Below, in pieces: positions 3,074 through 31,016 of a stretch of 64,000 nucleotides of DNA. The translations under genes and the position numbers were made by a program. The notes under the pieces were generated by a model. That model did no database searches, had not been told where the DNA came from, and saw only the letters and a program-made list of their open reading frames with translations. Location of the stretch: IMG/VR virus record IMGVR_UViG_3300018080_000098, positions 1 to 64,000 of that record, one strand, 5' to 3'. Numbering within the stretch: position 1 is the stretch's first letter; every line of letters begins with the position of its first letter.

Positions 3074-3139
3074 CGCGTTTCTCCGTTTCGCAAATCGTCG
3101 TACTGCCCCGGGATGGCGCAGTAGATATCCACAGTCATC

Positions 3140-3643
3140 CTACTCTGATCCTTTCAGCACTACACTTGCCAGGACACCCAGGGATTCCACCTCGAACGAA
3201 GTGTGCTTCAGATTCATCTTGAAGTGGAAAGACTCCGTGGAGACAACCATCTGGTCTAGCTCCGACCGGATCTGCGTGCCCCCCTGGTAGCTCCACTTCT
3301 CTTCCGCGCAGCGCTCCAGGATATGCTCCAGCACAGAGTTGCCCTCCACCACCTCCACATACTCTTCCCGCTCCAACACTTCGATGAACTCCTGTACCTC
3401 TTCCCGCTCCTCGTCCAGACTATACAGGTCGAACCACGTTCCCCGGTAGTCGAAGAACGTCAGGTTGTTGAACGACGTACCGTGCGCGTCCTCCATAACC
3501 TGTGCGCTGCGTGCGCGCTTTGCCACGTCTGCGCGCAGACGGTCATCCACCTCCAGCAACAGCGTTGGAGTAGTGAACTCAAAGTCCTGCGAGCAAGGGA
3601 AGCAGCGGACCACAAGGTACTGCTTACGAGTTTTCGTCGTCAT
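3140..3643 (-). CDS. Hypothetical protein
   Basis: Start reassigned to MTTKTRK after a GGAGG RBS. Confidence 0.7.
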   Translation of the reverse strand: MTTKTRKQYLVVRCFPCSQDFEFTTPTLLLEVDDRLRADVAKRARSAQVMEDAHGTSFNNLTFFDYRGTWFDLYSLDEEREEVQEFIEVLEREEYVEVVEGNSVLEHILERCAEEKWSYQGGTQIRSELDQMVVSTESFHFKMNLKHTSFEVESLGVLASVVLKGSE

Positions 3644-3645
3644 GA

Positions 3646-3840
3646 TTAGTCCTCCACCACGGCTTCCGTTTCGCACTCCAGACAAATCCAGGTGTTGCCT
3701 TTGTCCGGGCCGTGCGTTACTTCCCCGTTTCCACGGTGGTCTATGAAGTTCCCTTCCTCGTCCACTTCCCAATACTCGGTAATGTGGATCACCGTCTCGA
3801 AACGTTTGTGTTCGGGATTCTTCAGGCATCGAGCTTTCAT
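3646..3840 (-). CDS. Hypothetical zinc-binding protein
   Basis: MKARCLKNPEH...WICLEC. Confidence 0.65.
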   Translation of the reverse strand: MKARCLKNPEHKRFETVIHITEYWEVDEEGNFIDHRGNGEVTHGPDKGNTWICLECETEAVVED

Positions 3841-4067
3841 GGTAGCACTCCATCTCCATCCTCGGGCGGAACCCAAGCGAAAGTCTTGAGCACCGTCCCA
3901 TCGTGATCCACGTACTCTGTGAGCATCGAGCCGCAGCACAAACAGTCGTACTGCTGGTAGGCTCGTCCGCTGCTCTCCGGTCCCTCGTCGTCCTCGGGAA
4001 TCGGGGCGAGCTTCGACCGCTCACTCAGCGGGTGCGTGCAGGTTTGCCATGGGGTTTTGAATTTCAT
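3837..4067 (-). CDS. Hypothetical protein
   Basis: MKFKTPWQTCTH...YDCLCCG; overlaps its neighbours by ATGA. Confidence 0.6.
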   Translation of the reverse strand: MKFKTPWQTCTHPLSERSKLAPIPEDDEGPESSGRAYQQYDCLCCGSMLTEYVDHDGTVLKTFAWVPPEDGDGVLP

Positions 4068-4408
4068 CGCAGCGTCACCTGCTCCGACTCGCCATCCCAG
4101 CGAGCCGTCTGGCTGTTGAATCCTCGGGGAATGACCACCGACACACCCGTCTGCTGGTGCATCAGAATCATCAGGGCCACGGCGTCTCCCTCGTGACGGA
4201 GCTTCATCTTCTCCATGATGTAGTCCACCGTCACGTAGCTGCCCAGATCGTACAGGAAAGACGTGCCACCGTTGTCGCTGTTGCCCAGCCAGGAGATCAG
4301 CCACTTGGTCATGCTGACCTCTGCGAGCACACAGAAGTATCGTGTGCCGTTGCCCGGCTCGTGCTCGACAGTCAGTACCTGTCCCTGGAACTCTTCGGTC
4401 ATCGTCAT
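4064..4408 (-). CDS. Hypothetical protein, paralog of 20300-20635
   Basis: PGNGTRY...YIMEKMKL...DAVALM versus PGNGSRY...YFKEKMGI...DAAALM. Confidence 0.75.
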   Translation of the reverse strand: MTMTEEFQGQVLTVEHEPGNGTRYFCVLAEVSMTKWLISWLGNSDNGGTSFLYDLGSYVTVDYIMEKMKLRHEGDAVALMILMHQQTGVSVVIPRGFNSQTARWDGESEQVTLR

Positions 4409-4493
4409 CTGCTTGTCCTCCGATGCGTTTTTCCATCCGACGCAATCGAGAATATCAAATCAACTTGACGTTGTCAAGAAAAAATTTCGACGG

Positions 4494-4711: not shown

Positions 4712-5065
4712 CTACTCCTCCGGGCACAGGTCCAGGTTCGTCCGGTAGAAACAAGTCTCCCCCTTGTACTGCCGGTAAACCTCGAAAGCCTTGCGGTGCG
4801 CCCGCTTCGACAGGGGTCGAGTCACACCCGTAGCGAACTCCGTCACGCGCCCGCTCAGGTGAATGCCGAAGCACCCTTCCGGCATGTCCACGAACAGACC
4901 ACCACCCACGTAGTAACTCTTGTGCTCCTCGATACGATTCAGTACCTTGAGCCAGTCCGTCTTGTCCAGACGCTTACGCACCTTAGTCTTTTCGTCTGCG
5001 CTGACCTTCTTGGCTTTCTTCTGCGCGTGCTTCGCCTTACGCTTGACGCTCCAATGCTTGAACAT
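4712..5065 (-). CDS. Hypothetical basic protein
   Basis: MFKHWSV...; GAGGAG RBS after a promoter. Confidence 0.7.
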   Translation of the reverse strand: MFKHWSVKRKAKHAQKKAKKVSADEKTKVRKRLDKTDWLKVLNRIEEHKSYYVGGGLFVDMPEGCFGIHLSGRVTEFATGVTRPLSKRAHRKAFEVYRQYKGETCFYRTNLDLCPEE

Positions 5066-5200
5066 GGGGATTCTCCTCGCAAATTGTTTCCGTCCGACGC
5101 GATCAAAAATATCAAACGCGAAAAAATTTGTCAACAAAAATCGGCGCGTCGAGTGAGCGAGTATGTTATCTTCTACTGTACCCCAAGGAAAAGGTGAACT

Positions 5201-6018: not shown

Positions 6019-6687
6019 CTACTCCTCGTCCTCTTCCTTCGGCGGGAAAGGCTGCAACGACTCCCGCACTTCCTCCTCCGTCCCCAGCGCCAACTCCTCG
6101 TGGCACAGCCCAACCTCTTCCTCCAGCTTCTTGATCGCTTCCTCGTAGTAGAAGCGTTGCGAGTTGTAGATTTGCCGGATAGCTGCCACCGCACGGATCG
6201 CTCGCTGGATTACACTCCACGCTTCGTCCACCTGCCTCGTGGCATTGTTGATAGCAATGTGACCATCTTTCTCGTACCGCTGAAGACTGGTGCGCAGTAA
6301 CCGGATCTCCGACATCCGACGCTTACGCCCCTCCGGACTCACCCGAAGCTCTTCCCGCTCCGCTGCCCGTGCCGCTTCCTCTTCTGCCTTCACGCGGTCC
6401 CGACGCTCCACAGCTTCCTGCGCCGCAGCTTTACCCAGCGGAGAAAAATCGAAGACGTACACGTTGTAGTGTGTGCCCCACTCTTTGAATACACCATGCT
6501 TGACTAGTACCTTCACCGATGCCATGTGTGCGTATTCACGGTGTAGCGTCATCCTCCCCACTAGATCAGGAGGTTCATACTTCGATGCAACCTCACCGTT
6601 CTCATGAAACGCAATAAGCGCGTGAGTCTGCTTGTCGTTCAAAGACCCGAGCAGCGTGTCAACTTCTTTTTTCTTAGGCTTCGCCAT
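6019..6687 (-). CDS. Hypothetical coiled-coil protein
   Basis: MAKPKKK start follows the GAAACGGAG RBS. Confidence 0.75.
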   Translation of the reverse strand: MAKPKKKEVDTLLGSLNDKQTHALIAFHENGEVASKYEPPDLVGRMTLHREYAHMASVKVLVKHGVFKEWGTHYNVYVFDFSPLGKAAAQEAVERRDRVKAEEEAARAAEREELRVSPEGRKRRMSEIRLLRTSLQRYEKDGHIAINNATRQVDEAWSVIQRAIRAVAAIRQIYNSQRFYYEEAIKKLEEEVGLCHEELALGTEEEVRESLQPFPPKEEDEE

Positions 6688-6704
6688 TGTGCTCTCCGTT
6701 TCGT

Positions 6705-7364
6705 CTAGTCCTCGCTCTTGCTCGACATCGCTCCGAGGATCGCACCCATGACGCCTTCCGGGTCTTCCTTCCACTCCGCGGCATCCCAGTAGGCTACTTC
6801 ACCCACCATCGGATCCACGATGCGCACGTACCCACAAGGCTCCGGGTACGCAGGACTGCGAAGCTCACAGCCCGTCTCCAGCTTGACCACAGTCTCCTTC
6901 GGATACCCATCCCCCGAAACAGACTCGCCCTTGGCTTCCCGCACCAGAGAATCCAGCAGCTCCCCCAGCTCGAAAGCCTCCGCACCACCATCCGACGAAA
7001 TATCCAGCACCCCCGGCGCCAACCTCCGAATCGCCGCCAGCATCAGCACTACCGCCCCATCGTAAGGCTTGTAGGCCGTCTTGCAAAAATCGAAAGCCCC
7101 CTCCCGCTTGAACCGCCCCGCGTCCTCGTAGTCGTACTTCTTCCGCTTCGCCACCCGAATCAGGAAAGTCTCGTGACTGTCCTCGTCCTTCCCGTTGAAC
7201 CGAATCATCTTCTTGGAAATCTCCGGTCCCTTGTCAGGCTTGTCGTACTCGTAACAAAGCACGCCCTCGAACCGCTTCGCCACCAGACGAGCAGCCGCAC
7301 AAACCAGCTTCCACTCCTCGTCCGTGAAGCTCCGGTGTTGATTCCAATAATGCGTGTATCCCAT
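6705..7364 (-). CDS. Conserved phage hypothetical protein
   Basis: MGYTHYW...IRFNG...SHETF...FCKTAYKPYD. Confidence 0.8.
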   Translation of the reverse strand: MGYTHYWNQHRSFTDEEWKLVCAAARLVAKRFEGVLCYEYDKPDKGPEISKKMIRFNGKDEDSHETFLIRVAKRKKYDYEDAGRFKREGAFDFCKTAYKPYDGAVVLMLAAIRRLAPGVLDISSDGGAEAFELGELLDSLVREAKGESVSGDGYPKETVVKLETGCELRSPAYPEPCGYVRIVDPMVGEVAYWDAAEWKEDPEGVMGAILGAMSSKSED

Positions 7365-7437
7365 TTTTCTTTTCTCCGTTTCGCTGCGTTCAAAATATCA
7401 AAACAACTTTACGTTGTCAAGAAAAAAATTCGCCGCC

Positions 7438-7986
7438 TTACTCCGGTAGGATGATAGACGAGAACCGAGCCGCGACATCCGCTTGGACAGGCGCGTCACT
7501 CTTGACTTCCTTAATCGGCTGGGGGATCTCGCGGGGAATATTTTCGAGGGCGTGCTTCAACTGCTTACGTAGCTTCGGGTTGTAACGGATGTCCCCGTTA
7601 TCCAGCGCACGCTCCAGCTGCTCCCTACTGGTGATGTTGTAGTCTGCCCACAGCTTCCGAGCGGTAGCTGGTCCCACGCCAGGCAAGCTCAGGATGTCCG
7701 CCATCGACGGAAGCCCTTTCGCTCGGATAGACTTGAGGCGTCCACAGGTTCCAGTCTGCGTAATTTCCTTGACAGCTTTGGCTGTGCTCTTGCCGATCAT
7801 GGGAATCTTCTGGAGCGCAGTCAATGTCTTCGAGGACACGTCCTCGTCTTCACACCACTCCATGAGTCCGGTAGCAGCATTCTCGAAAGCCATCGCGCGC
7901 CTCTTGTCTCCCAAGATAGCGTAGCCCTGCGACACTTCCATCAGGACTTCGGCCACTTCTTTTCCTGTGGTGGGTTTACTCATCAT
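7438..7986 (-). CDS. DNA polymerase X (PolX/pol beta) N-terminal HhH domains only
   Basis: HhH motifs KIPMIGKSTAKAVKEI and SLPGVGPATARKLW, plus the PolX-like AMAFENAA helix; no catalytic palm. Confidence 0.75.
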   Translation of the reverse strand: MMSKPTTGKEVAEVLMEVSQGYAILGDKRRAMAFENAATGLMEWCEDEDVSSKTLTALQKIPMIGKSTAKAVKEITQTGTCGRLKSIRAKGLPSMADILSLPGVGPATARKLWADYNITSREQLERALDNGDIRYNPKLRKQLKHALENIPREIPQPIKEVKSDAPVQADVAARFSSIILPE

Positions 7987-8374
7987 CTTCTCCGAGAAGC
8001 TGTGCAACCTTCTTAGGGTCCATCCCGTACTCTTCTGGGAAGTCTACCGAGCTTGAGCAGCTGACGCTTTCTACTCGGGCTTGACGTAGGAACGTCCGCA
8101 CTTCCTCGGGATCGTCCGTGGTCAGGTCGGGCTCCCGGTTTGGCACGAAGGGACAAGTCACCTGGAACTTACCATCCACGATAGTAAGGAAAGCACGTTT
8201 GCCCGGGATGGCCTGCGCTTCATGCACCAGCGCACCACAGTCGGGACACTCCCCGTAGGGCACGGGCTCCCCAGGTGAGAGGCGTTCCAACAGATTGGGG
8301 ATGTTGGGAAACCTTACCTTGAAGTCCTTATCCTCGATCTCTCTTTTACAGTCACTACACTCGAACAACCACAT
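7976..8374 (-). CDS. Hypothetical zinc-ribbon protein
   Basis: CSDC...GECPDCG. Confidence 0.7.
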   Translation of the reverse strand: MWLFECSDCKREIEDKDFKVRFPNIPNLLERLSPGEPVPYGECPDCGALVHEAQAIPGKRAFLTIVDGKFQVTCPFVPNREPDLTTDDPEEVRTFLRQARVESVSCSSSVDFPEEYGMDPKKVAQLLGEDDE

Positions 8375-8509
8375 TTGTTTCTCCGTTTCGCATTGCACGG
8401 AAAATATAACAACCGCGCGCCGCCGCGTCAACAAAATTCGGAATTTTTCAGCAGCCTTTTCTTACTTATTCTCTAGCAGACATTCCTATCCACACAGGAG
8501 ATTTCTATC

Positions 8510-10224: not shown

Positions 10225-10458
10225 CTAGTTGTTCGCGATACCCTGCAATGCACTCTCCACACCTTCCACGTAGGAGTCTTCCTCGACGTTGATCCCCGCG
10301 CAAGCGTGTGCCAGTATCAACGCTTCGATACCGTCGAGCATCGCGTCGTACTCATCGTCCTCGCGGTCCCGGGGAATCTCCGAGTGCATACGGCCAGACC
10401 CCTCGTTGACCGTAATGCGAATCTCACCTGCACAGGTTTCCAGCTTGTACTTCGTCAT
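10225..10458 (-). CDS. Hypothetical protein
   Basis: Packed ORF in the operon. Confidence 0.65.
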   Translation of the reverse strand: MTKYKLETCAGEIRITVNEGSGRMHSEIPRDREDDEYDAMLDGIEALILAHACAGINVEEDSYVEGVESALQGIANN

Positions 10459-10787: not shown

Positions 10788-10801
10788 TCTGCCCTCCGTT
10801 T

Positions 10802-11287
10802 CTATCGAATAGGCTCCTCAGCCTTGCGCATCTTTTCGACCAGCTCCTCAGCCACATCCCAAGTGTGTTTCATCTCCACACCCGTCATGCTGATAGCCGC
10901 AGCCCCACCACCAAACTCCCCACTACGCGGTCTGGTACACCCAGCGCTCCAGGTCATCGTCCAGATAGTGTGGTCGTCTGTCGTCTCCAGAACGTCCGAC
11001 AGAAAATAAAGCACCGTCTCCACGGCAACACCCTCGTCCGACATCACAGTCAGATAGGTCTTCCCATCATCCTCCTGGATCTTCAGATAGAAACCCACCC
11101 CGTAGTCGTGGATAGATTCCTGTAGGTCTTCCGAGAGATCCCTGTAGACAGCGTCAACCTCCTCCGGCAATTCCTTGTCCGGATTGTCAGCAACGAAATT
11201 GATCGCCGCGAAAATACCCTGAGCCACCTTCGCCTGCTCCGGCGTTACCAGATAGCTCTCCGCAAACTCACTGTAGTAATCTGCCAT
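10802..11287 (-). CDS. Hypothetical protein, paralog of 2498-3073
   Basis: WSAGCTRPRSGEFGGG. Confidence 0.8.
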   Translation of the reverse strand: MADYYSEFAESYLVTPEQAKVAQGIFAAINFVADNPDKELPEEVDAVYRDLSEDLQESIHDYGVGFYLKIQEDDGKTYLTVMSDEGVAVETVLYFLSDVLETTDDHTIWTMTWSAGCTRPRSGEFGGGAAAISMTGVEMKHTWDVAEELVEKMRKAEEPIR

Positions 11288-11586
11288 CTTGTTTCTCCGT
11301 TTCGCAAATCACCCACCGAAAATATCACACCGCACTTGACAACGTCAAGTAGAAAATTCAAACGGCCACAAATCCCGCATTACCTTCTCTACTCCCACCA
11401 AGTTAGGCTCCCACCATTCACCCTCCCCCAACACCCACAGTACCCAACCTTTTCCCTCGCGCTCCAGCATTGCCTGGTTGCGCAAAGCGATCTCCTGCAA
11501 CCGGATACGGAGCGTGCGATATTTCGGGACAACTGGAGAGCCGTCTCCGAAAGTATTGGCTAGGAGTTGGTAGTCTGCTTTGGCCA

Positions 11587-12434: not shown

Positions 12435-12521
12435 TTCAGCAGCTCCTAGTTGTTTCCATCCGACGCGATCAAAAATATCAAAACCGCCGCGCGCCGTCAA
12501 GAAAATTCGACAAAATATTTT

Positions 12522-13590: not shown

Positions 13591-13622
13591 TCCCTTTTCT
13601 CCGTTTCTTCTGTTGCCTACCA

Positions 13623-14363: not shown

Positions 14364-14439
14364 CGTTTTCTCCGTTTCTCAATTCGTGCGACAAAAATAT
14401 CACACCGAACTTTACGTTGTCAAGAAAAATATTCGACGA

Positions 14440-15331: not shown

Positions 15332-15882
15332 CCTACTACCTCCGTTTCGTTCTGATACACCAGAGAATTGCAGTTGGGACAAATCCCCTGCGGGACCGTG
15401 TCCCCAGGAGAAACCCGATCTACCACCAGCGGGTCGGGCCAACGATACTTCAGCTTGCCTACCGGCCACCGGTTTCTTCCGCACGCAGGATTGCTGCACG
15501 TAAGCACAGGCTCCTCTGCGATAGCCTTCGCCAGATCGTCCAAGCTTACCTCGTCTACCTCACCGCCCCGGTAAACATAAGAGAAAAGAAACCCCTCGCA
15601 GTAGAAGGTCTGGTAGGACCCATCTTCCACAAAAGGCGCAATCTCCTCGTAGAACTTTTCCTCGTAGTTCGACGACCAATTTAAGCTATTCGGATAGGCG
15701 TCCACAATATCTCCATCCTTCGTCATGCTCAACTCGATGCCGAAGTTTGCACAGACGTCATGGACGTCCTCACCTTTCGCAAACTCCTCCCCCAGCGAAC
15801 GCAGGTGCTCCACCATCGCTCCCACGTTTTCCTTTTTGATTTCGATGTTACCACCCTGACCAACGTATGCTGTCATACTCAT
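15319..15882 (-). CDS. Hypothetical protein with C-terminal zinc ribbon
   Basis: Leader carries both conserved motifs; CSNPAC...CPNC. Confidence 0.75.
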   Translation of the reverse strand: MSMTAYVGQGGNIEIKKENVGAMVEHLRSLGEEFAKGEDVHDVCANFGIELSMTKDGDIVDAYPNSLNWSSNYEEKFYEEIAPFVEDGSYQTFYCEGFLFSYVYRGGEVDEVSLDDLAKAIAEEPVLTCSNPACGRNRWPVGKLKYRWPDPLVVDRVSPGDTVPQGICPNCNSLVYQNETEVVGWHP

Positions 15883-15997
15883 GATGTTTCTCCGTTTCGC
15901 TCGTTTCCATCCGACGTGTCAAATATAACAACGCGCCACCGCACGGTCAAGAAAAATCGAATTAAAAAATTTTTTGAACGGGAAAGAAAAGGCGGGG

Positions 15998-16813: not shown

Positions 16814-17031
16814 CTTTTTTCTCCGTTTCCAATTCACCAATCGAAAACGAATTTAACAAATGCGAAAAAATCCGTCAAGAAAAAAATCGCACCGACCGCT
16901 CCCTCCAATATTCGGTTAAACCGAACGTCCCAACCCACCTTCCCCCTTGTCAAGTTTTTATTCTGTTGTGTGAGAAATATTCGACAGGAAAGGTGGGAAG
17001 GGGTGGGGGCTCGAACGGCCCCCGGAAACTC

Positions 17032-17826: not shown

Positions 17827-17878
17827 ACTCTTTCTCCGTTTCTCTCTTTCGAGTTTATCCTACGCCTTCCAATAAGGC

Positions 17879-19609: not shown

Positions 19610-19649
19610 TTCTTTTCTCCGTTTCTTTCCCTACTTGACAACGTCAAGC

Positions 19650-21378: not shown

Positions 21379-21573
21379 TTTTGTTTCTCCGTTTCGTTGC
21401 TCCACCAATCAATTTAATTCGGTGGAACCAGCTTGTCAAGAAATTCAAATTGGACGAATCGGGTCCGATTATTTCGGTGCAAAATATCACACGCTTCACG
21501 GATACTCCAGGGTATTTTCCATTGCGCACGATAAGCTATTGCCCTCCCTATTTTGTATAGAGAGAGCTACCCT

Positions 21574-22673: not shown

Positions 22674-22694
22674 GCCGTTTCTCCGTTTCCCCGG

Positions 22695-23036: not shown

Positions 23037-23103
23037 CTCGTTTCTCCGTTTCAAAAATCGTGATCACAAAATATCAAATCGACTTGACGTCGTCAAGTAT
23101 TTT

Positions 23104-23715
23104 TCACGGCCGCTTCCAAATTACTTCGCCGTCGCGCTCCACACGTAAAAGGTAGTTGTACATCTGAGGACGCGGTAGCTTGCTGCGCCCAAGACAATCA
23201 TCTTCCACTAACGCACTTTTGCCGTTGTTGTACACTCCCAGTAACGTGAGGACTTCTTCGTTGCCCATCCCGCCAAAGCACGAGAGCACGAGCTTGTCCC
23301 CCTTCTCCAAATCTTCCGCCAACGGTACTGAACCAGCTTTGGCAGCAGCTTCTTGAAACTCCTTGTCAAAGTAGATAGAATGCCAACGCCGGACGACTGC
23401 TTCAGCCTTGGTGTTGTCTACAGGACGGCCGTCTCTACGCTGGCCAAGCTTCGGGTGCTCCAGGAAAACAATGCTGCACGCACGATTCTTTTCGTACCAC
23501 AGCTTCCCTCCCCAGAACTTTCCCAGGTACATCGCGTGCCGCGTAAGATTGCCTTCGGCCCAGGAAAGTGAAACGCTCAACCCACCATGTTCCGCGGTCC
23601 CATACCACGTTACCCCGCGCTCCAATTGTTGGGAATATTGCGCACGACCCCAGGGAGTAGAAGTTCCTTTGCCTTCCTCGAATCCTTTAATGTCCGCTAC
23701 TTCCACTGTGCTCAT
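23104..23715 (-). CDS. DUF7007-like hypothetical protein
   Basis: TPWGRAQ...TAEHGGLSV...WYE; start reassigned to MSTVEV after GGAGG. Confidence 0.7.
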   Translation of the reverse strand: MSTVEVADIKGFEEGKGTSTPWGRAQYSQQLERGVTWYGTAEHGGLSVSLSWAEGNLTRHAMYLGKFWGGKLWYEKNRACSIVFLEHPKLGQRRDGRPVDNTKAEAVVRRWHSIYFDKEFQEAAAKAGSVPLAEDLEKGDKLVLSCFGGMGNEEVLTLLGVYNNGKSALVEDDCLGRSKLPRPQMYNYLLRVERDGEVIWKRP

Positions 23716-23939
23716 CACAACCTCCAGCAGTTCGCCGTCCGACAACACATATTATGCACAGCAACTTTACGTTGTCAAGTGAAATCGAATTTTATTAGTT
23801 CGAGTGCGAAATATCACGCAAATAGCAGCTACATACCCGTAGCTGGTACTACAACAGGGCTTGGTTATCCGAACCAATAAAATCGGTCATTGCTCAATTT
23901 TGCCCTGCTCGGCCAGCTGGCTCACGTGATTACAGGTAC

Positions 23940-24649: not shown

Positions 24650-25519
24650 CTACTCGCCGTCCGCAACCTCGGTCAGCTTCAGCTTCAGCTTCCGAGTACA
24701 CGCCTTCAGCAGCGCCTCCCCGTCAGCCTCACCCGCGGCGAACGTGAGCGCCATGATCACCAGCTTCCGAGCATCCCCCGTGGGCACCGTGTCACCCTTC
24801 ATCTCGGACTGGTTCAGCCCCCGCATGATCTTCACGATGTCACGCTTCCCAGGACGACGGGCCATCCCCGTCACCTGCGCGGCAGCCTTGGCCGTCTTGC
24901 GCCGCTTGCCACCCGAAACCACGAGCACCTTGTCCAGCATCCTCTTCTGGTCCGCAGCCTTCACCTTCCGAGCGATGATCAGCCCAGCCTCGAGAGTCAC
25001 CTTCCCCGTGTCCACCGCGTCCTTCAGAGCCTTGCACGCTCCGGCCATCGTCGTCATCTGGTCCACCCAGCCGACACTCTTGTTGACCTTCACGCTGATC
25101 TCCTTCCCCGAAAACCCGCGCTTCTTGTACTCGCGCACCAGCGCCACCTTGTCCGTCAAGGTGAAGTCCTCTCGGTTCAGATTCTCCTTCACCGCCAGGT
25201 CGAGCGCCTCGTCCTCGTCCACGTCATGCACGATGACAGGAATGCGCATCTCCATCTCCGGGTCCTCGGAGAAAATCTTGCGTAGAGCACGAATGCGCCG
25301 CTCACCCGCAATCAGGATGAAAGGCTGCTCCGGGTTCGCCCGGTCACGCCGCACCCACAGCGGGTCCAGTACCCCGTTCTCCTTGATGTCCTCCGCCAGA
25401 TCCTCGATCCCCTCGAACACCGTTCGCGGGTTGAAACCATCGACCACCTGAATGCGCTCGGGGCTGTCCACCGAGTACGCATTCGACCGAAACACACCAT
25501 CCAACTTTCTCATCGACAT
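24650..25519 (-). CDS. parB: ParB/Spo0J-like partition protein
   Basis: NPR...IEDLAEDIKENGVLDPLWVR...LIAGERRIRA (Box II)...ENLNREDF, followed by an HTH. Confidence 0.9.
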   Translation of the reverse strand: MSMRKLDGVFRSNAYSVDSPERIQVVDGFNPRTVFEGIEDLAEDIKENGVLDPLWVRRDRANPEQPFILIAGERRIRALRKIFSEDPEMEMRIPVIVHDVDEDEALDLAVKENLNREDFTLTDKVALVREYKKRGFSGKEISVKVNKSVGWVDQMTTMAGACKALKDAVDTGKVTLEAGLIIARKVKAADQKRMLDKVLVVSGGKRRKTAKAAAQVTGMARRPGKRDIVKIMRGLNQSEMKGDTVPTGDARKLVIMALTFAAGEADGEALLKACTRKLKLKLTEVADGE

Positions 25520-25618
25520 TTAATCACCTCCGGTAATTTGTTTTCCGTCCGTTCACGCAATCAAATATAATTGCCGAACAATACAACGTCAAGTAAAAAA
25601 TCGAATTTTCTGTGCAGA

Positions 25619-25923: not shown

Positions 25924-26331
25924 CTAGGTCATCTTGCTCCGCACGATGTGGATTATTTTGTCAGCTCGAGCCTTGAGCTTCCGAATGATCAGACGTTCAT
26001 CTTTCAGGCGCACGACGTTCAGGACGAACGAACTGAAGGCGATATCAAATTTTTCACCCAGCTTCGGTTCCTGTGTAGTGACGCTACCCTGCTGCCACCC
26101 GTTGCCATGAGTACGATGGTTGGGATCGTAAGCGTAGACCTTACAGCCCAATGCACGCAGGTAGTCTGCGTTGCGCCCGGATTTACCTGCGCCCCAGTCG
26201 AGCACGCGCGTACCTTTTTTGAAGAAGCCTTTCTTCGCGAGCCAGCGGATGGCTGGGGATGCTTTGCCACTGATAGACGTGGCACCCTTTTCTACGGCTG
26301 CGCCTTTATAGGCGCGTTTCTTTTTCGACAT
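25924..26331 (-). CDS. Small class I SAM-dependent methyltransferase
   Basis: VLDWGAGKSG motif I; YDP; FSSFVLNVV. Confidence 0.8.
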   Translation of the reverse strand: MSKKKRAYKGAAVEKGATSISGKASPAIRWLAKKGFFKKGTRVLDWGAGKSGRNADYLRALGCKVYAYDPNHRTHGNGWQQGSVTTQEPKLGEKFDIAFSSFVLNVVRLKDERLIIRKLKARADKIIHIVRSKMT

Positions 26332-26400
26332 GTGCGACCTCCGTTTCGCTACATCGAACGTAGCAAATCCGCATTACGACGTCAAGTGGAAACGGAATTT

Positions 26401-26598
26401 TTAGAGGCCGAAGAAGAGGGAAAGGTGGGAGTCGCTTCGACGTTGGAGCTCCTCTTTCGCAACATGGATAGCCAGGAGCTTTCCGTCGAAGTGGTCTGTC
26501 AGTGGTCGTAGAAGGTTTCCTGCTTCAAGCACCTTGACGATTTCCTCGTCGGTGTACTCGGTGAAAGAATCCCTTAGATGCTTTTCATACGCTGTCAT
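26401..26598 (-). CDS. Hypothetical protein
   Basis: GAAACGGAGG RBS directly after the tRNA-like RNA. Confidence 0.65.
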   Translation of the reverse strand: MTAYEKHLRDSFTEYTDEEIVKVLEAGNLLRPLTDHFDGKLLAIHVAKEELQRRSDSHLSLFFGL

Positions 26599-26633
26599 TG
26601 GTTGCCTCCGTTTCATTGGTGTTGGGTTGGTAG

Positions 26634-26758
26634 TGGAGCGCCAGGGATCGAACCTGGATCGGGTACGGAGCTTGCGAAACGGAGATGAAAGGCAAGCAGC
26701 CTAGGCGGGATCAGTTGTCGGACGGAAACCGCTACCCGATAGCCAAATCCTTCGCTCC
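26634..26758 (-). ncRNA. 125-nt tRNA/tmRNA-TLD-like RNA with anti-leader loops
   Basis: Acceptor-like stem GGAGCG/CGCUCC plus A; stemless D-loop AAGGAUUUGGCU; helix AUCGGGUA(G)CGG/CCGUACCCGAU; T-arm CCAGG-UUCGAUC-CCUGG; internal stem GCUUGC/GCAAGC; own promoter. Confidence 0.8.
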
Positions 26759-26766
26759 TATGTTCA

Positions 26767-26794
26767 AGTATAACTACTCGTTATTGGATGTCAA
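26767..26794 (-). promoter_or_regulatory. Near-consensus promoter TTGACA-N16-TATACT for the tRNA-like RNA
   Basis: -35 at 26794-26789 and -10 at 26772-26767; predicted start at 26759-26761, immediately before the stem's first G. Confidence 0.85.
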
Positions 26795-27124
26795 GTCTTT
26801 CCTCGGATTATTTTTCTTCTTTCTTTTCGTACGCTTAAACGACTTGTCGTAGGGTGCTCGGCAAGGCATCTCTGCGTAGAGCTCTTTGGCTTCTGCGCGG
26901 GAGATTTGGCACGCCAGGATGTGCCCCTTGATGATGCTGATGACTATGAAATATTTATCATCTTTCATGCGTCGTCGCACCCACACCAGGGCTGACGTGC
27001 TAGAGGAGTCCACGGCTATGTCTCGCCACTTGTCTCCTTCGGCGCCCTTCCAGTCTTCTCCTGTAAGGGAGGTCTGGTAGTTCAGGGGAGCCATCTCCAG
27101 CAGCTTATTTTTAGCGTTACTCAT
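26774..27124 (-). CDS. Hypothetical protein
   Basis: MSNAKNK...; basic tail. Confidence 0.65.
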   Translation of the reverse strand: MSNAKNKLLEMAPLNYQTSLTGEDWKGAEGDKWRDIAVDSSSTSALVWVRRRMKDDKYFIVISIIKGHILACQISRAEAKELYAEMPCRAPYDKSFKRTKRKKKNNPRKDLTSNNE

Positions 27125-27149
27125 ACAGCTACTTCTATTAAGTATGTTG

Positions 27150-28256
27150 CTACGCCGCCTCCGCTTCACGCTCGCTCAGGATACGCTTAGCTTCCTCTTC
27201 GGCCAGCTTCACTTTTTGCTTCCAGGCGCGCACCTTCAGCGTAAGGCCGAGGGTCATCTCCCTGCGGGCCCAGTAGTTCTTGTGCCGCTTGCTAGGCTTG
27301 TAGGCCGTCTCCCACGGCTTACCCCAGAAAGCCCAAACAGGAACTTCCACTCCAGTATCCTCGTCACCGTTACACCAGGCTACCGGGTCCATACCCTTCA
27401 GCCCGTGCTTGATGAACGCAGCCTCGCTCACCCGGATAGGGAAGTTCAGACGCTTGATGAGAGCCCGAAGCTTCGACAGATGCTCCTCAGCAGCTTCCAT
27501 CCCAGCTCGAGTCTCCGCCACTTCCAGGTAGTCCCCTTCCAGCTCGAAACCTTCCAGCTCCGCCTCGAAGGCCATGACCTCGACTTCCAGCTTCGCTCCC
27601 GTTTCCTTGGAAAAGTAAGACCCCTTTTCTACGGGGAACTTCTTCCGAAGCTTCCGCACCACAGCCCCGTAGTGCTGACTCTCGTCCTGCAGACGAAGCA
27701 CAGCAGCCTTGGCCACGAGATACGGACGACCGTAAATACTCGACCAACGCCCAGGGTTCACAGTGTAGGTCAGCTTGATTTCGTCGGCCAGCTCTCCGCT
27801 GTCTCCGAAGATCTCGATGGTCTGCCACGCATCCTCGTCCCGGAACTCCCCGTCCGCTCCACAGAAGTTGAAAGCGCGAAACGCTCCCACCCCTCCGTCC
27901 TTGATGACCTGAGCATCCTTGATCAGCAGCCCCAGGTTCGGAAGATGCTTATGGCACGACGGTGCCAGCACTTCCCCATGACGGTTGTCCCGCGACAGAA
28001 CGATTTCGTTGCTGCGCTCCACCCGAGGACCAGCTGCCCGGTAGGTCGGGATGTTGATGACGGTATTACCCTTCACCAGCTCCATGATGAGGGCAGGCAG
28101 GTCCAGCTCCATCGTGGTAGTCCCATCCTCACCCTCGAACTGCCGAGGCTTACGTCCCTTCAGGTCGCAGCCCCACCCCTCAAGGTAATCCCCCACCTCA
28201 GCCACTACGTCGCGGCTGCGGTCACTCAGTTGATCGAGAAATTTCTGAAAATCCAT
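27150..28256 (-). CDS. Hypothetical protein
   Basis: About 368 aa; GAAACGGAG RBS. Confidence 0.8.
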   Translation of the reverse strand: MDFQKFLDQLSDRSRDVVAEVGDYLEGWGCDLKGRKPRQFEGEDGTTTMELDLPALIMELVKGNTVINIPTYRAAGPRVERSNEIVLSRDNRHGEVLAPSCHKHLPNLGLLIKDAQVIKDGGVGAFRAFNFCGADGEFRDEDAWQTIEIFGDSGELADEIKLTYTVNPGRWSSIYGRPYLVAKAAVLRLQDESQHYGAVVRKLRKKFPVEKGSYFSKETGAKLEVEVMAFEAELEGFELEGDYLEVAETRAGMEAAEEHLSKLRALIKRLNFPIRVSEAAFIKHGLKGMDPVAWCNGDEDTGVEVPVWAFWGKPWETAYKPSKRHKNYWARREMTLGLTLKVRAWKQKVKLAEEEAKRILSEREAEAA

Positions 28257-28343
28257 TTTGCTTCTCCGTTTCAATTGCTCTCACATAATAACGACGCATC
28301 AATACGTCGTCAAGAAAAAAATGCGAAAACAACTAACGGAGAG

Positions 28344-28793
28344 CTACTGCGGAAGGCCCAATTCTTTGGTTCCCTTGTACCATTCGGTAAAGGGTTTCCA
28401 CGCTCCACCCTTCGGACCACTCATCCGAAAGTCTCCCACCTCTACCTCTAAATATTTATTCGAGTTAGCGTCCCGCATCTTGAGCACCACACTCTTTCCC
28501 TTGTCTACCTCTGCCCTGCGCAGAACGTCTTCCACCCGCATGACATCCTTCATGGTTGGCTTCCGGATGACAATAGAACCCATTTCTGTGATTCGCTTGT
28601 TCACCTTGTCCGTCCTCCCCAGGTGCTCAGCTGTCACCCTACCCCTCGCGTCGTCCAACGCTACTACCATCTTTTTCTTCATACGCTTCGTAGCACGCTC
28701 AGCGATAGGACGAAACGCTAGCTTATCCACACCCTTTGGGAATTCCTTTACGCGGATGATGAAATCTATCACGACGAACTTTTCCTGTTCCAC
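28344..28793 (-). CDS. Hypothetical basic protein
   Basis: GGAGG RBS and a GTG start. Confidence 0.7.
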   Translation of the reverse strand: MEQEKFVVIDFIIRVKEFPKGVDKLAFRPIAERATKRMKKKMVVALDDARGRVTAEHLGRTDKVNKRITEMGSIVIRKPTMKDVMRVEDVLRRAEVDKGKSVVLKMRDANSNKYLEVEVGDFRMSGPKGGAWKPFTEWYKGTKELGLPQ

Positions 28794-28851
28794 AGCAAAC
28801 CTCCGTGTACGTAAGTCTCCCCTCGCATTTTACAAGATAGCCTGGAGATTC

Positions 28852-29148
28852 TTAGCCAGCAGATTTGCGGTCTTTTTCGATACGGTCCAGCGCTTCTTGC
28901 ATCTTGCGTTGCCACTTCTTCGTAGAACGAGGCTTCTCCTGATACGCTTTCTTTCCCGGGGCCTTACGCCGCTTCCCCCACACAATCTCCGTCGCACCCA
29001 TGTACAACTGGCAAGCTTGCGCCAGGTCGATACCGTCACGCCTACCAGCTCTGTCTACGACGAAATACTTGTCCTGTGCAGGAGTCGTGCACAGCGTGTG
29101 CCCGTCTTCCAGTTTCGCCAAGGGCTGTATCTCTGTGCTATGGCTCAT
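28852..29148 (-). CDS. Hypothetical protein
   Basis: Packed ORF in the operon. Confidence 0.6.
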   Translation of the reverse strand: MSHSTEIQPLAKLEDGHTLCTTPAQDKYFVVDRAGRRDGIDLAQACQLYMGATEIVWGKRRKAPGKKAYQEKPRSTKKWQRKMQEALDRIEKDRKSAG

Positions 29149-29476
29149 TGGAAATCTCCCTCCGCACGCGCCGCTTGGTCCGCTCTTCCAGCACTCCCTT
29201 CGGCGCCCGTGTCAAGTCCCGTGGCAGAACGTACTTGAAGTCGTAGTAGTCGAAGTAGCGTGTCCACTCTTCGTCGTCTTCCAGCACAGCTTTTACCGAA
29301 ACCTCAGCGCGCAGCTTTCCATCCTTTCGCTTGAAGTCGATGACCTTCCCGAACGCTTGTACACCCTCCCACTCAAACTCCACCATGTTCCCAATGGAAA
29401 AGCCATCCATCTCATCTTTGCTGGCACGCTTTCCACGAGGGCCTTTGTAGTTTTTAAGATGTTCTCCTCTAGGCAT
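29138..29476 (-). CDS. Hypothetical SH3/KOW-like protein
   Basis: FSIGNMVEF...FGKVIDF; GGAGG RBS. Confidence 0.65.
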   Translation of the reverse strand: MPRGEHLKNYKGPRGKRASKDEMDGFSIGNMVEFEWEGVQAFGKVIDFKRKDGKLRAEVSVKAVLEDDEEWTRYFDYYDFKYVLPRDLTRAPKGVLEERTKRRVRREISNEP

Positions 29477-29491
29477 TATTCCCTCCTCCCA

Positions 29492-30910
29492 TTAAGGTAC
29501 CAGAGCTAGCTTCCGCCGACCCACCGAGAAGTCTTTCGTAGTAAACTCTCCCGGCGCCATCTTCGCCAACTCATTATTCACTCGCTGCCGAAGCTCCGCA
29601 GCAAAGTTTACCAGCTGCTCCAGCTCCGCATCCGTGTACTGGTCGTGAGGATACACGAGCTTCACCAGCCCAGACACCAGCTTCTCCACCGCCACCACGT
29701 CACGCCGTGTCATATTTGACGCCAACGAAACCTGATGTGCCACGTCACGCCGGTCCCGCGTCCGCAACGTTCCCAGCACCTGGCCCAGATAGTCCACCAC
29801 CAGGCCGTATCCCTGGCTAATCGAGGTCGGACTCAGTTTCGGAATTTCCCATCCTGGTAGATACCCGTGCACCCTGTCCAGAAAAGCGGTGTCCTGCAGC
29901 ATCGCGGGCAACGGCTCGAACAGATGTCCGTACCTACCATCCGGTTCCTTCCCCACCACATCCAGGTTCCCTGCTAGAACCATAGAGGAATCTGAAGAGT
30001 ACGTCTTGCCCCCTCGAGCAAACTGCCCCGACTCCATGAAATCCTTCAGCATGGAAATAGTCGAGATGTTGTCGAACCTCGTGCTTGCAATCTCGTCCAG
30101 CTGCACAATCTTGTACGACCCCAGGATGCCCATCGTTCCCGTAGTTACGTTGGCAAACAGGCTCGCCGCCGACACGTTCGCTCCCGAGGCAGTGTACACA
30201 GACGGGGATACGTTACGCAGCAGAAACGTTTTACCAGTCTGCCGAGGACCCAGCTCCATCACGTTCAGGTTGGGCTCCACAGCGGGCGCCAGCCGCACCA
30301 GGTACAGCAGCTTCTCCCGCTCGCTCAGCCTATCCGTCTCGTACCCAACCGACGTCAGCAGAACGTCGATCCACTCCTCCGTCGTAAACTTCCCCCGCCG
30401 CTGGGCAAAGTCTTCCGCGCTGGGGCAGTCTGCTTGGAAGGGCATCACGCCGACCACCACTACTCTGTTCGGGCTCCGCGGGCCAGCGGGTGGAAGATAC
30501 TTCAGGCGGTACGCGCCCCACAGTCCTCCCGTTAGCAGCCGGGGATAGTCATCCACGATCTGCTCCAGGATTTCTGCACGGTTCTCCCCGAGGAAAGTGA
30601 GCGCGCACACGAGCGCACCTGTTTTGAGGTTGACGGTTACCATCGCTTTGTCGATGATGACAACCTCGTGTTCCTTGACGAGCTTGGCCTTAACGACTTC
30701 GCGGGTATCGGCTTCGGGGAAGATCTTGGCCACGTGTTCGCGCATGCGTTTCATATCAGCTTGCGCTTGAGATTCTTTGACGTGGTTGGCGATCAAATAT
30801 TCGACAACGTACTGGGGGATGCGGGGGAGCCCGGCATCGCGTACGAGTGCCTTGCGGACCACTACTCCGTCGAAGATGCGTCTGAGCTTATGTACTGTTT
30901 GAGACTTCAT
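29492..30910 (-). CDS. brxL: BrxL-like MCM-family ATPase lacking the Lon protease domain
   Basis: IPQYVVEYLI; MELGPRQTGKT (Walker A); QLDEIA; LKDFMESGQFARG; DTAFLDRVHGYLPGWEIPK. Protein ends right after the ATPase domain. Confidence 0.85.
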   Translation of the reverse strand: MKSQTVHKLRRIFDGVVVRKALVRDAGLPRIPQYVVEYLIANHVKESQAQADMKRMREHVAKIFPEADTREVVKAKLVKEHEVVIIDKAMVTVNLKTGALVCALTFLGENRAEILEQIVDDYPRLLTGGLWGAYRLKYLPPAGPRSPNRVVVVGVMPFQADCPSAEDFAQRRGKFTTEEWIDVLLTSVGYETDRLSEREKLLYLVRLAPAVEPNLNVMELGPRQTGKTFLLRNVSPSVYTASGANVSAASLFANVTTGTMGILGSYKIVQLDEIASTRFDNISTISMLKDFMESGQFARGGKTYSSDSSMVLAGNLDVVGKEPDGRYGHLFEPLPAMLQDTAFLDRVHGYLPGWEIPKLSPTSISQGYGLVVDYLGQVLGTLRTRDRRDVAHQVSLASNMTRRDVVAVEKLVSGLVKLVYPHDQYTDAELEQLVNFAAELRQRVNNELAKMAPGEFTTKDFSVGRRKLALVP

Positions 30911-31016
30911 CCGTTGTAACACCTCCGTTTCGCATCGCACATCAAACATAGCAATTCCGCTTGCCGTTGTCAAGCGGCAATCGGGAATTGCAGCGAAATT
31001 TCAAACGGTTGGGAAT

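What the first reader, a model, noticed from the sequence alone, without database searches (positions are those of the whole stretch)
3081..30931. Extended RBS motif GAAACGGAG in 20 early-region genes, not seen in late or replication genes
Seen: plus-strand CTCCGTTTC at 3081, 6694, 7374, 8381, 10794, 11295, 13599, 14370, 15340, 15890, 16821, 17834, 19617, 21387, 22681, 23044, 26339, 26606, 28264 and 30923. Each lies about 5-12 nt upstream of a minus-strand start codon. Genes beyond 31 kb use ordinary AGGAG/GGAGG, and I found no copy there by eye. Known: only GGAG pairs with the 16S anti-SD, so the invariant GAAAC extension needs another explanation. An exact 9-mer is expected less than once per strand in 64 kb. 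Inference: it is a recognition site for the 26.7-kb RNA or for an RNA-binding protein; it also contains the CsrA-type ANGGA core.
Basis: partly seen in the sequence, partly recalled or inferred. Interest (0 to 1): 0.65.

Follow-up and report, generated by a model that had tools for sequence, protein, structure and literature searches.

The report
Phage antisense RNA matching early-gene ribosome sites
A 350-kb phage marks about forty of its early genes with two short leader motifs, and it encodes a small tRNA-like RNA whose two hairpin loops are exact complements of them, so one RNA probably switches off translation of the whole early gene set.

Summary
GAAACGGAG occurs 20 times on the minus strand between 3 and 31 kb, always 6-12 nt before an ATG (0.93 expected by chance). 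It lies in a hairpin loop of a 125-nt RNA gene (26634-26758, minus strand), which has a near-consensus promoter, an acceptor-like stem and a T arm.

A second loop of this RNA is the exact complement of a second motif, GTCGGACGGAAAC. That motif starts about 20 other early transcripts. In total, 42 of 82 early-region genes carry at least 8 nt complementary to one loop, against 5 of 357 other genes.

Related phages keep an RNA at the same locus, and the loop changes together with that phage's own ribosome-site motif (GAAAC-, GAAC-, GAC-GGAG; GGAGGUAA against GGAGGA). The helices show compensatory changes.

The best reading is a trans-acting antisense RNA that occludes early ribosome sites. It works like the C4 RNA of phages P1/P7 but across a whole regulon. 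It matches no Rfam family. No expression data exist, so repression and its biological role are inferred. The CsrA idea gains no support.

The parts
26634..26758 (-). 125-nt tRNA-like antisense RNA gene. It has a 6-bp acceptor-like stem (26753-26758 with 26635-26640), a connecting stem, two hairpins with seed loops, and a T arm (26641-26657, loop UUCGAUC).
   Evidence: Sequence. Constrained folds of 7 homologues. Covariance model R1 finds 7 homologues at E 3e-36 to 8e-05. 94.4% of cells are paired, and 9 pairs show changes on both sides against 2.0 in shuffles. ARAGORN and Rfam find nothing.
26767..26794 (-). Promoter of the RNA gene: TTGACA, 16 nt, TATACT. The -10 element ends 8 nt before G1 of the RNA.
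   Evidence: 11 of 12 consensus matches, tied for the best in 20-32 kb. Promoter-like hexamers lie at a similar distance before the RNA in L277, L280 and G005.
26676..26691 (-). Loop 2 (CUUUCAUCUCCGUUUC) of hairpin GCUUGC/GCAAGC. The seed CUCCGUUUC (26676-26684) is the exact complement of the ribosome-site motif GAAACGGAG.
   Evidence: Predicted unpaired probability of the seed is 0.92. Complement 8-mers are 20-30 times on the sense strand, against a background of about 5.
26709..26728 (-). Loop 1 (UUUCCGUCCGACAACUGAUC) of hairpin GCGG/CCGC. The seed GUUUCCGUCCGAC (26717-26729) is the exact complement of the leader motif GTCGGACGGAAAC.
   Evidence: There are ten exact 13-mers in the genome: nine on the minus strand in early leaders and one of opposite sense here.
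3081..3089 (-). GAAACGGAG ribosome-site motif of gene 2498-3073 (191 aa)
6694..6702 (-). Motif of gene 6019-6687 (222 aa)
7374..7382 (-). Motif of gene 6705-7364 (219 aa); a promoter lies just upstream
8381..8389 (-). Motif of gene 7976-8374 (132 aa); promoter upstream
10794..10802 (-). Motif of gene 10455-10787 (110 aa); intercistronic, no promoter
11295..11303 (-). Motif of gene 10802-11287 (161 aa); promoter upstream
13599..13607 (-). Motif of gene 13078-13590 (170 aa); intercistronic
14370..14378 (-). Motif of gene 13623-14363 (246 aa); promoter upstream
15340..15348 (-). Motif of gene 14942-15331 (about 129 aa); intercistronic
15890..15898 (-). Motif of gene 15319-15882 (187 aa). It is preceded by a leader-motif variant at 15903-15915.
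16821..16829 (-). Motif of gene 16586-16813 (about 75 aa)
17834..17842 (-). Motif of gene 17032-17826 (264 aa)
19617..19625 (-). Motif of gene 17879-19609 (576 aa, AAA+ ATPase)
21387..21395 (-). Motif of gene 20632-21378 (248 aa, DUF7227)
22681..22689 (-). Motif of gene 22119-22673 (184 aa); intercistronic
23044..23052 (-). Motif of gene 22695-23036 (113 aa); promoter upstream
26339..26347 (-). Motif of gene 25924-26331 (135 aa, methyltransferase-like)
26606..26614 (-). Motif of gene 26401-26598 (65 aa), which lies directly downstream of the RNA and is probably co-transcribed with it
   Evidence: No terminator-like site lies between the RNA and this gene.
28264..28272 (-). Motif of gene 27150-28256 (368 aa)
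30923..30931 (-). Motif of gene 29492-30910 (472 aa, BrxL-like Lon-type ATPase); 12-nt spacing
5086..5098 (-). Leader motif GTCGGACGGAAAC (exact) about 8 nt after a -10 element, that is, at the 5' end of the transcript of gene 4712-5065
2251..2263 (-). Leader motif variant (1 mismatch) after a promoter
4429..4441 (-). Leader motif variant (2 mismatches) after a promoter; gene 4064-4408
12452..12464 (-). Leader motif variant (1 mismatch) after a promoter; gene 11769-12434
15903..15915 (-). Leader motif variant (1 mismatch) after a promoter; gene 15319-15882
25542..25550 (-). Partial leader motif (GGACGGAAA) after a promoter. The gene is 24650-25513 (ParB_N protein). The same site is kept in relative L276.
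23735..23745 (-). UUGUCGGACGG in the leader of gene 23104-23715. It is complementary to the 3' half of loop 1 (12-nt contiguous match).

Best explanation
GAAACGGAG is a Shine-Dalgarno element (GGAG) whose 5' extension is a pairing site for a phage-encoded, trans-acting antisense RNA. The RNA is about 125 nt and is transcribed on the minus strand at 26634-26758 from a near-consensus sigma70-type promoter. It folds into an acceptor-like stem stacked on a T arm, and a connecting helix carries two hairpins. Loop 2 pairs with the ribosome sites of about 22 early genes. Loop 1 pairs with GUCGGACGGAAAC at the 5' end of about 20 other early transcripts. SHOWN: the complementarity, its confinement to the early region, the conservation and compensatory changes of the RNA, and the joint change of loop and ribosome-site motif among related phages. 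INFERRED: (1) pairing occludes the ribosome site or leader and so represses translation, and perhaps stability, of the early gene set; (2) the tRNA-like module serves 5'/3' end formation (RNase P or RNase Z type) and stability, releasing the RNA from the downstream 65-aa gene; (3) the biological role is either timed shut-off of early genes or, as with C4 RNA of P1/P7, immunity against superinfecting phages of the same specificity.
For: (a) The single opposite-sense copy of the 9-mer and the single opposite-sense copy of the 13-mer both lie in the loops of two hairpins of one 125-nt element. The chance of a given 9-mer and a given 13-mer both occurring in 125 nt is about 5e-4 times 2e-6. On the plus strand their order is the reverse of that in a leader, so the element is not an inverted leader copy.
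(b) 42 of 82 early-region genes have at least 8 nt of contiguous complement to a loop within -40..+6, against 5 of 357 other genes; shuffled loops average 2.45.
(c) Homologous RNAs lie at the same locus in L276, L277, L283, L280, G005 and L286. 94% of cells are paired, and 9 pairs have compensatory changes against 2.0 in shuffles and 1-4 in slid controls. More than ten G-U cells fit only the minus-strand transcript.
(d) Loop and motif change together: ours CUCCGUUUC with GAAACGGAG; G005 UUACCUCCGUUC with GAACGGAGGUAA; L286 ACCUCCGUC with GACGGAGGU; L280 UACCUCCGUUUC with AAACGGAGGU; L289 UCCUCCGUUCG with CGAACGGAGGA. Our loop matches 20/44 of our own early genes but 1/82 of G005's. G005's loop matches 25/82 of its own and 3/44 of ours. 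Neither loop matches any non-early gene of its own genome (0/357 and 0/243).
(e) A diverged relative keeps the RNA and its promoter at about 96% identity, while the flanking genes are 77-85% identical.
(f) Duplex energies are -15.5 (loop 2 with ribosome site) and -22.4 (loop 1 with leader), against -6.6 to -9.1 kcal/mol for canonical 16S tails with the motif. The seeds are predicted to be unpaired.
(g) Precedent: loops a' and b' of C4 RNA bind an upstream sequence and the ribosome site (PMC5320573).
Against: There is no transcript evidence: no RNA run holds the locus, and the host is unknown. The RNA sits in the early region under a host-type promoter, so it would be made at the same time as its targets; a timer or immunity role is conjecture. 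About half of the early genes lack either motif. Relatives L284 and L285 keep C-GGAGG ribosome sites (CAACGGAGGT, CACGGAGGTGA), but no RNA was found in the parts held, so the C might have a function independent of the RNA. Specificity groups overlap: the L280 and L286 loops also match G005 targets. In L286 the seed is predicted to be mostly paired. G005 shows no counterpart of the loop 1 / leader pair. The structural alignment was fitted to the model, which favours the structure.
Confidence: 0.7

Rival explanations
1. Cis-only control. The structured RNA is only the 5' leader of the 65-aa gene, and its loop is an anti-SD that sequesters that gene's own ribosome site. The match to the other 19 genes would follow merely from all of them sharing the same ribosome site for some other reason.
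For: The RNA is directly followed by the small gene without a terminator in all homologues. The cis ribosome site carries the motif in ours, L276, L277, L280 and L283. C4 RNA of P1 also acts on a site downstream in its own transcript (PMC5320573).
Against: In L286 the cis ribosome site is AAGGAGGG, without the extension. In G005 the cis site matches 7 nt, while the consensus of the other genes matches 12 nt. The cis-only model does not explain loop 1's 13-nt match to leaders of other transcripts. The minimum-energy fold of RNA plus cis site keeps the RNA fold and does not pair loop 2 with the cis site. It also leaves the invariant GAAAC of the other 19 genes unexplained.
Confidence: 0.08
2. 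The motif is read by a protein. Candidates are host CsrA/RsmA (ANGGA core), a phage translational repressor, or a RegB-like endoribonuclease that cuts early GGAG sites. On this view the antisense copy in the RNA is incidental.
For: ACGGA fits ANGGA, and leaders often hold two or three GGA triplets. 14 of 20 sites are GGAG followed by AAA, like the A-rich RegB/S1 target in T4 early mRNAs (PMC1702504).
Against: The phage has no CsrA, RegB or RegA homologue. A protein model does not predict perfect complements of both motifs in two loops of a conserved RNA, nor their joint change across phages. The invariant GAAAC differs from the CsrA SELEX context (from my own knowledge).
Confidence: 0.07
3. 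A general anti-SD mimic or an extended SD. GAAA-C-GGAG would pair with a 16S tail ...CCUCCUUUCU with one bulged C to give stronger initiation. The RNA loop would simply mimic the 16S 3' end and compete for all strong SDs rather than for early genes specifically.
For: The loops resemble the 16S tail (UUACCUCC in G005, L280, L286 and L288). In L288 the ribosome sites are heterogeneous and the loop GUUACCUCCAUU would pair with any GGAGG(U). The bulged duplex with a UUUCU tail is -9.1 kcal/mol.
Against: In two near-complete genomes, matches of at least 9 nt are confined to early genes (20/44 against 0/357; 25/82 against 0/243). The extension varies between phages, whereas a host rRNA tail should not. 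Loop 1 has no SD character.
Confidence: 0.07
4. DNA-level operators. Both motifs are binding sites of a DNA-binding repressor of early transcription, and the copies in the RNA gene are operators in inverted orientation.
For: The leader motif always lies at about +1 to +13 of promoters, a typical operator position. Orientation does not matter for DNA binding.
Against: At least 6 of the 20 GAAACGGAG sites are intercistronic and lack a promoter, yet keep a strict 6-9 nt spacing to the start codon. The copies in the RNA gene sit precisely in hairpin loops of a structure supported by compensatory changes.
Confidence: 0.04

Closest known systems
C4 antisense RNA of phages P1 and P7 (Rfam RF01695)
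   Same: It is a phage-encoded structured RNA closed by a terminal stem that starts with GG. Two loops pair with an mRNA: one with the ribosome site (b') and one with an upstream sequence (a'). Loop differences define specificity between related phages. It has tRNA-like recognition (RNase P) and lies upstream of a small gene in the same transcript (PMC5320573).
   Different: There is no match to the Rfam model, even at E up to 10. Ours is 125 nt against about 77 nt and adds a connecting helix and a canonical T arm. The two loops address two largely separate gene classes (only 2 genes have both). There are about 42 predicted targets over a 52-kb early region rather than one operon. The phage is a 350-kb virus with no evidence of lysogeny.
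T4 RegB endoribonuclease and the GGAG of early mRNAs
   Same: The logic is the same: early genes are marked at their Shine-Dalgarno by a shared short element (GGAG plus an A-rich 3' context), through which an early-expressed phage factor inactivates them (PMC1702504).
   Different: In T4 the factor is a protein nuclease helped by ribosomal protein S1. There is no RegB homologue here. Here the discriminating part is 5' of GGAG, and the candidate reader is an RNA.
tRNA-like domains (tmRNA tRNA-like domain, bacterial Y RNA-like YrlA)
   Same: An acceptor-like stem is stacked directly on a 5-bp stem with a 7-nt T loop (UUCGAUC in ours, UUCGACU in G005), and the rest of the RNA emerges where the D and anticodon arms would be.
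   Different: It has A3-U70 rather than G3-U70, no tag reading frame, a variable discriminator base and no encoded CCA. ARAGORN and Rfam do not call it. In L276, L277, L280 and L283 the T loop is UGNGAYC rather than UUCG.
Hfq-type multi-target bacterial sRNAs with conserved seeds
   Same: One seed matches many mRNAs at or near the ribosome site.
   Different: Here the targets appear to have evolved a uniform 9-13-nt site, the seeds sit in hairpin loops, and there is no terminator-type 3' end in the tRNA-like version.

Membership tests
C4 antisense RNA (Rfam RF01695) | Match to the family covariance model | tested here: not met
   There is no C4 hit at the gathering score in the window, none at E up to 10 in 26300-27300, and none at E up to 5 in L276 and L283.
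C4 antisense RNA (Rfam RF01695) | Two loops complementary to a ribosome site and to an upstream mRNA sequence | tested here: met
   Loop 2 is complementary to GAAACGGAG at ribosome sites. Loop 1 is complementary to GUCGGACGGAAAC at transcript 5' ends. They mostly address different genes.
C4 antisense RNA (Rfam RF01695) | 5' maturation by RNase P; role in immunity | not testable with these tools
   All that can be said is that an acceptor/T-arm minihelix is present and that the promoter places the start 0-3 nt before G1.
tRNA | Cloverleaf with D arm and anticodon arm | tested here: not met
   ARAGORN finds no gene in the window. There is no Rfam tRNA hit at E up to 10. Only the acceptor-like stem and T arm are present.
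tmRNA | G3-U70 pair, tag reading frame, pseudoknots | tested here: not met
   A3-U70 is invariant in 7 homologues. ARAGORN and Rfam are negative. The RNA is only 125 nt long.
T4 RegB / early GGAG system | RegB endoribonuclease gene in the phage | tested here: not met
   PF10715 gives no match at E up to 1 in the whole 350-kb genome.
T4 RegB / early GGAG system | Early-gene SD GGAG followed by an A-rich stretch | tested here: met
   14 of 20 sites read GGAGAAA or GGAGAAG. This is a resemblance only.
CsrA/Rsm regulon | CsrA protein, and a sponge RNA with repeated GGA | tested here: not met
   PF02599 gives no match in the phage. The RNA carries UCC, the antisense of GGA, so it is not a sponge. 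Host CsrA is not testable because the host is unknown.
T4 RegA translational repressor | RegA homologue | tested here: not met
   PF01818 gives no match in the genome.

The most novel reading that the evidence does not exclude
The RNA is an activator rather than a repressor: an anti-Shine-Dalgarno supplied in trans. Its tRNA-like module would dock on the ribosome or a translation factor, while its loops, which resemble an extended 16S 3' tail, capture early phage mRNAs through their private extended sites. Early genes would thereby get privileged translation that is orthogonal between related phages. The evidence shows only the pairing, not its sign, so this reading is not excluded.
Probability: 0.06. 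Interest if true: 0.95.

Novelty: new variant of a known kind. Interest (0 to 1): 0.72.

Why it matters
Post-transcriptional control in large lytic phages is known almost only from T4 proteins (RegA, RegB). Phage antisense RNAs are known as single-target devices such as C4, sar, OOP and sas. Here one small RNA appears to be wired to about half of a 52-kb early region through two uniform, phage-specific sites that co-evolve with it. If confirmed, this would be a regulon-wide RNA switch in a giant phage. It would explain why early genes carry an 'over-specified' ribosome site, and it would suggest RNA-defined specificity (immunity) groups among related jumbo phages. It would also supply a natural set of mutually orthogonal ribosome-site/antisense pairs for synthetic biology. 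The prediction is directly testable with reporter fusions and compensatory mutations.

Tried and rejected
- Megablast of 20 kb against cultured phages gave no match.
- A scan of viral contigs with a T-arm/acceptor pattern was too generic: it returned 118 loci, mostly tRNA or att fragments, and only the same phage was recovered.
- The metagenome scan with a 21-base pattern recovered only our phage and G005 among about 85 chance hits.
- The 368-aa neighbour found only the same phage in viral contigs.
- DNA-polymerase relatives G002-G004 are fragments without a motif cluster.
- MAFFT plus RNAalifold recovered only the acceptor and T arm, because the middle of the RNA was misaligned. I replaced this with a hand-drawn structure and a covariance model.
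- A 'GGAG followed by ATG' definition of ribosome sites was too noisy for logos.
- RNAduplex with 21-nt windows that included stem bases blurred the difference between cognate and non-cognate pairs. I replaced it with contiguous complement to the loops alone.
- The covariance model found no homologue in 34 loci of distant jumbo phages, nor in L284, L285 or L287.
- No RNA sequencing run holds the locus.
- Searches for RegB, RegA and CsrA were negative.
- Pfam gave nothing for the two genes flanking the RNA.
- Literature searches found no description of such a system.
- I considered a duplicated gene family as the source of the repeats and rejected it, because the flanks of the 9-mer and the coding starts differ completely.
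- Not used: the large protein-representative search, structure prediction, and any alternative genetic code.

Full report
**1. The observation**

The pattern search confirms all 20 plus-strand CTCCGTTTC copies at the stated coordinates. Dinucleotide shuffles give 0.93 +/- 0.92 copies.
- Read on the minus strand, each copy is GAAACGGAG. The gap to an ATG is 6-9 nt for 19 copies and 12 nt for 30923.
- 14 of the 20 continue as GGAGAAA or GGAGAAG.
- About half follow a sigma70-like promoter (TTGACA, 17 nt, TATATT) by only a few bases. The rest follow the stop codon of the preceding gene, so the element tracks start codons and not promoters.
- The flanks and the coding starts differ completely, so gene duplication does not explain the repeats.
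- There is no copy between 31 and 64 kb.

The window is the first 64 kb of a 349,793-bp IMG/VR phage record with a 100-bp terminal overlap. The rest of the genome holds six further copies. Two of them (334610, 346798) are ribosome sites of promoter-proximal small genes, and four are not ribosome sites. Sigma70-like promoters cluster on the minus strand at 0-31 kb (22) and 328-349 kb (20). So the 'early region' is one block of about 52 kb that runs across the ends of the record. Calling it 'early' is an inference.

**2.

A 21st copy has the opposite sense (26676-26684). It lies in a 170-nt gap between genes on the minus strand. The gap opens with a promoter whose 11-of-12 consensus match ties for the best in 20-32 kb (TTGACA, 16 nt, TATACT).

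The transcript would begin at GGAGCG and end in CCAGG-UUCGAUC-CCUGG-CGCUCC-A. That is a 6-bp acceptor-like stem joined without a spacer to a 5-bp stem carrying a T loop. ARAGORN and Rfam call nothing there, even at E up to 10.

Between these tRNA-like ends, a connecting helix carries two hairpins:
- GCGG[UUUCCGUCCGACAACUGAUC]CCGC
- GCUUGC[CUUUCAUCUCCGUUUC]GCAAGC

The antisense 9-mer occupies the 3' part of the second loop.

**3. A second motif and the first loop**

I profiled every 8-mer of the RNA for how often its reverse complement occurs on the sense strand of the genome. Two peaks of 20-35 copies stand over a background of about 5, one per loop.

The partner of loop 1 is GTCGGACGGAAAC.
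- It has nine exact copies on the minus strand and about a dozen with one or two mismatches.
- All lie 7-8 nt after a -10 element, that is, at the predicted 5' end of early transcripts. Most are at 329-349 kb and some at 2-26 kb.
- The only exact copy of opposite sense lies in loop 1.
- On the plus strand of the RNA gene the two motifs stand in the reverse order to that of a leader. The gene is therefore not an inverted leader copy.

**4. Target statistics**

| Measure | Early-region genes | Other genes |
|---|---|---|
| At least 8 nt contiguous Watson-Crick complement to either loop, within -40..+6 of the start | 42 of 82 | 5 of 357 |
| At least 9 nt complement to loop 2 | 24 | 0 |

- Shuffled loops give a mean of 2.45 early genes.
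- Only two genes match both loops, so the loops address two classes.
- Predicted duplexes are -15.5 kcal/mol (loop 2 with the consensus ribosome site) and -22.4 (loop 1 with the leader). Canonical 16S tails give -6.6 to -9.1 on the motif.
- The seeds are predicted to be unpaired: 0.92 for loop 2 and 0.63 for loop 1.

**5. Relatives**

*G005.* The nearest relative with an early region is G005 (260 kb; DNA polymerase 60% identical, AAA ATPase 53%). It has the same layout with a different sequence.
- CGGAGGTAA occurs 25 times, 23 of them between 20 and 60 kb. 21 lie on the minus strand, each a few bases before an ATG.
- One of the plus-strand copies (61309) lies in a homologous tRNA-like RNA.
- The loop of that RNA reads UUUACCUCCGUUC, the complement of the local consensus GAACGGAGGUAA.

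*Further contigs.* Neighbours of the 368-aa and ParB-like proteins led to more contigs. The 125-nt RNA is present at the same place in L276, L277, L283, L280 and L286, between a 114-137-aa gene and a 61-68-aa gene.

*Structure.* A covariance model built from four sequences finds all seven homologues at E 3e-36 to 8e-05. On the resulting alignment:
- 94.4% of cells pair.
- Nine pairs have changes on both sides, against 2.0 in shuffles (0 of 500) and 1-4 in slid controls.
- The acceptor-like stem is invariant.
- More than ten G-U cells fit only the minus-strand transcript.
- Caveat: the alignment is fitted to the model, which favours the structure.

*Constraint.* A diverged contig in another sediment sample matches the RNA and its promoter with 5 differences in 160 nt. 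The flanking genes are 77-85% identical.

**6. Loop and ribosome site change together**

| Phage | Loop (5'-3') | Ribosome-site motif it matches |
|---|---|---|
| Ours, L276, L277, L283 | CUCCGUUUC(GC) | (GC)GAAACGGAG |
| L280 | UACCUCCGUUUC | AAACGGAGGU(A) |
| G005 | UUACCUCCGUUC | GAACGGAGGUAA |
| L286 | ACCUCCGUC | GACGGAGGU |

Two more relatives carry differently built RNAs at the same locus.
- L289 has a 70-nt hairpin RNA (z -6.0) with loop AUCCUCCGUUC. Its ribosome sites read CGAACGGAGGA in 9 of 19 genes.
- L288 has a long terminator-closed hairpin (z -7.7) with apical loop GUUACCUCCAUU. Its ribosome sites are heterogeneous (AUGGAGG, CGGAGG, GGAGGUAA).

In cross-tests at 9 nt or more:

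| Loop from | Our early genes | Our non-early genes | G005 early genes | G005 other genes |
|---|---|---|---|---|
| Ours | 20/44 | 0/357 | 1/82 | 1/243 |
| G005 | 3/44 | 5/357 | 25/82 | 0/243 |

The groups are not fully separate, because the L280 and L286 loops also match G005 targets.

**7. Mechanism**

*Shown:*
- a conserved, structured RNA gene;
- exact, loop-exposed complements of two motifs that mark early 5' leaders;
- confinement of the matches to the early region;
- joint change of loop and motif across phages.

*Inferred:*
- The RNA acts in trans.
- Pairing at the Shine-Dalgarno or the 5' end blocks 30S binding, and perhaps invites RNase attack, so it represses the early set.
- The tRNA-like module gives defined ends and stability. 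No terminator separates the RNA from the next gene.

*Why cis-only action is disfavoured:*
- In L286 the gene downstream has AAGGAGGG, without the extension.
- In G005 the cis site matches 7 nt and the consensus 12 nt.
- Loop 1 has no cis partner.
- The minimum-energy fold does not pair loop 2 with the cis site.

The biological role is open. It could be timed shut-off of early genes, as RegB does in T4 (PMC1702504). It could equally be immunity against superinfection with loop-defined specificity, as with C4 RNA in P1 and P7 (PMC5320573).

**8. What weakens the case**

- There are no expression data, and the host is unknown.
- The RNA would be made together with its targets.
- Half of the early genes lack either site.
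- L284 and L285 keep C-GGAGG ribosome sites, but no RNA was found in the parts held.
- G005 has no loop 1 / leader pair.

**9. Comparison with known systems and novelty**

In function the closest system is C4 RNA: two loops, one on the ribosome site and one upstream, with tRNA-like processing and phage-specific loops. It is not a member of that Rfam family by the model test. It differs in size, in having a T arm, and above all in addressing about 42 genes rather than one operon. RegB, RegA and CsrA homologues are absent. Literature searches found no description of such a regulon-wide phage RNA. I class it as a new variant of a known kind.

Noticed in passing
genome 336106-336114 (outside the window; G000:C1): This is a second sense-strand CUCCGUUUC in the early region. 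It forms the 3' half of a hairpin, ACGGAGCCC-uugggug-GGGCUCCGU, followed by UUC. It may be a terminator built from the motif and its complement.
   Followed up: partly
L284 17385-17470: In a relative where the tRNA-like RNA was not found, an intergenic 14-bp terminator hairpin has the loop UAUACCUCCG and is preceded by GGUUACCUCCGG. Both are complementary to that phage's CGGAGGUAA ribosome sites. This may be an alternative anti-SD RNA.
   Followed up: partly
L284 7350-8530: At the position where other relatives carry the RNA, L284 has a gene of about 390 codons for a cysteine-rich protein with repeated CGDG/CDDG motifs.
   Followed up: no
window 29492-30910: The phage encodes a BrxL-like Lon-type ATPase (PF13337 at 4e-102, PF20442). 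It carries the motif and is conserved at the head of this gene block in all relatives. A BREX-type component in a phage early region is unusual.
   Followed up: partly
genome 215604-215680 and 219640-219718 (outside the window): ARAGORN reports two odd tRNAs among the phage's 18. One has a four-base anticodon (taag) and one a two-base anticodon (tc).
   Followed up: no
window 26452-26711: Two other samples (a sediment run and a seawater run, from different studies) each hold a short contig identical to this stretch. Both contigs end at 26711, inside loop 1.
   Followed up: no
L127 509-641: An unrelated high-GC viral contig has a 132-nt element, GGAGCG...GGTTCGAGTCCGGGCGCTCC, with the same acceptor and T-arm ends. 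The match to model R1 is weak (17 bits, E 0.5).
   Followed up: no
G005 20-44 kb (L256-L257): A second block of about 15 genes in G005 uses AACCGGAGGTAA, often preceded by GAAACCAAC. That is a sub-class of the motif with CC before GGAGG.
   Followed up: partly
window 54409-63086: This stretch holds the replication genes: two topoisomerase II subunit genes (54409-56508, 58222-60090) and a family A DNA polymerase (60096-63086). All have ordinary ribosome sites.
   Followed up: partly
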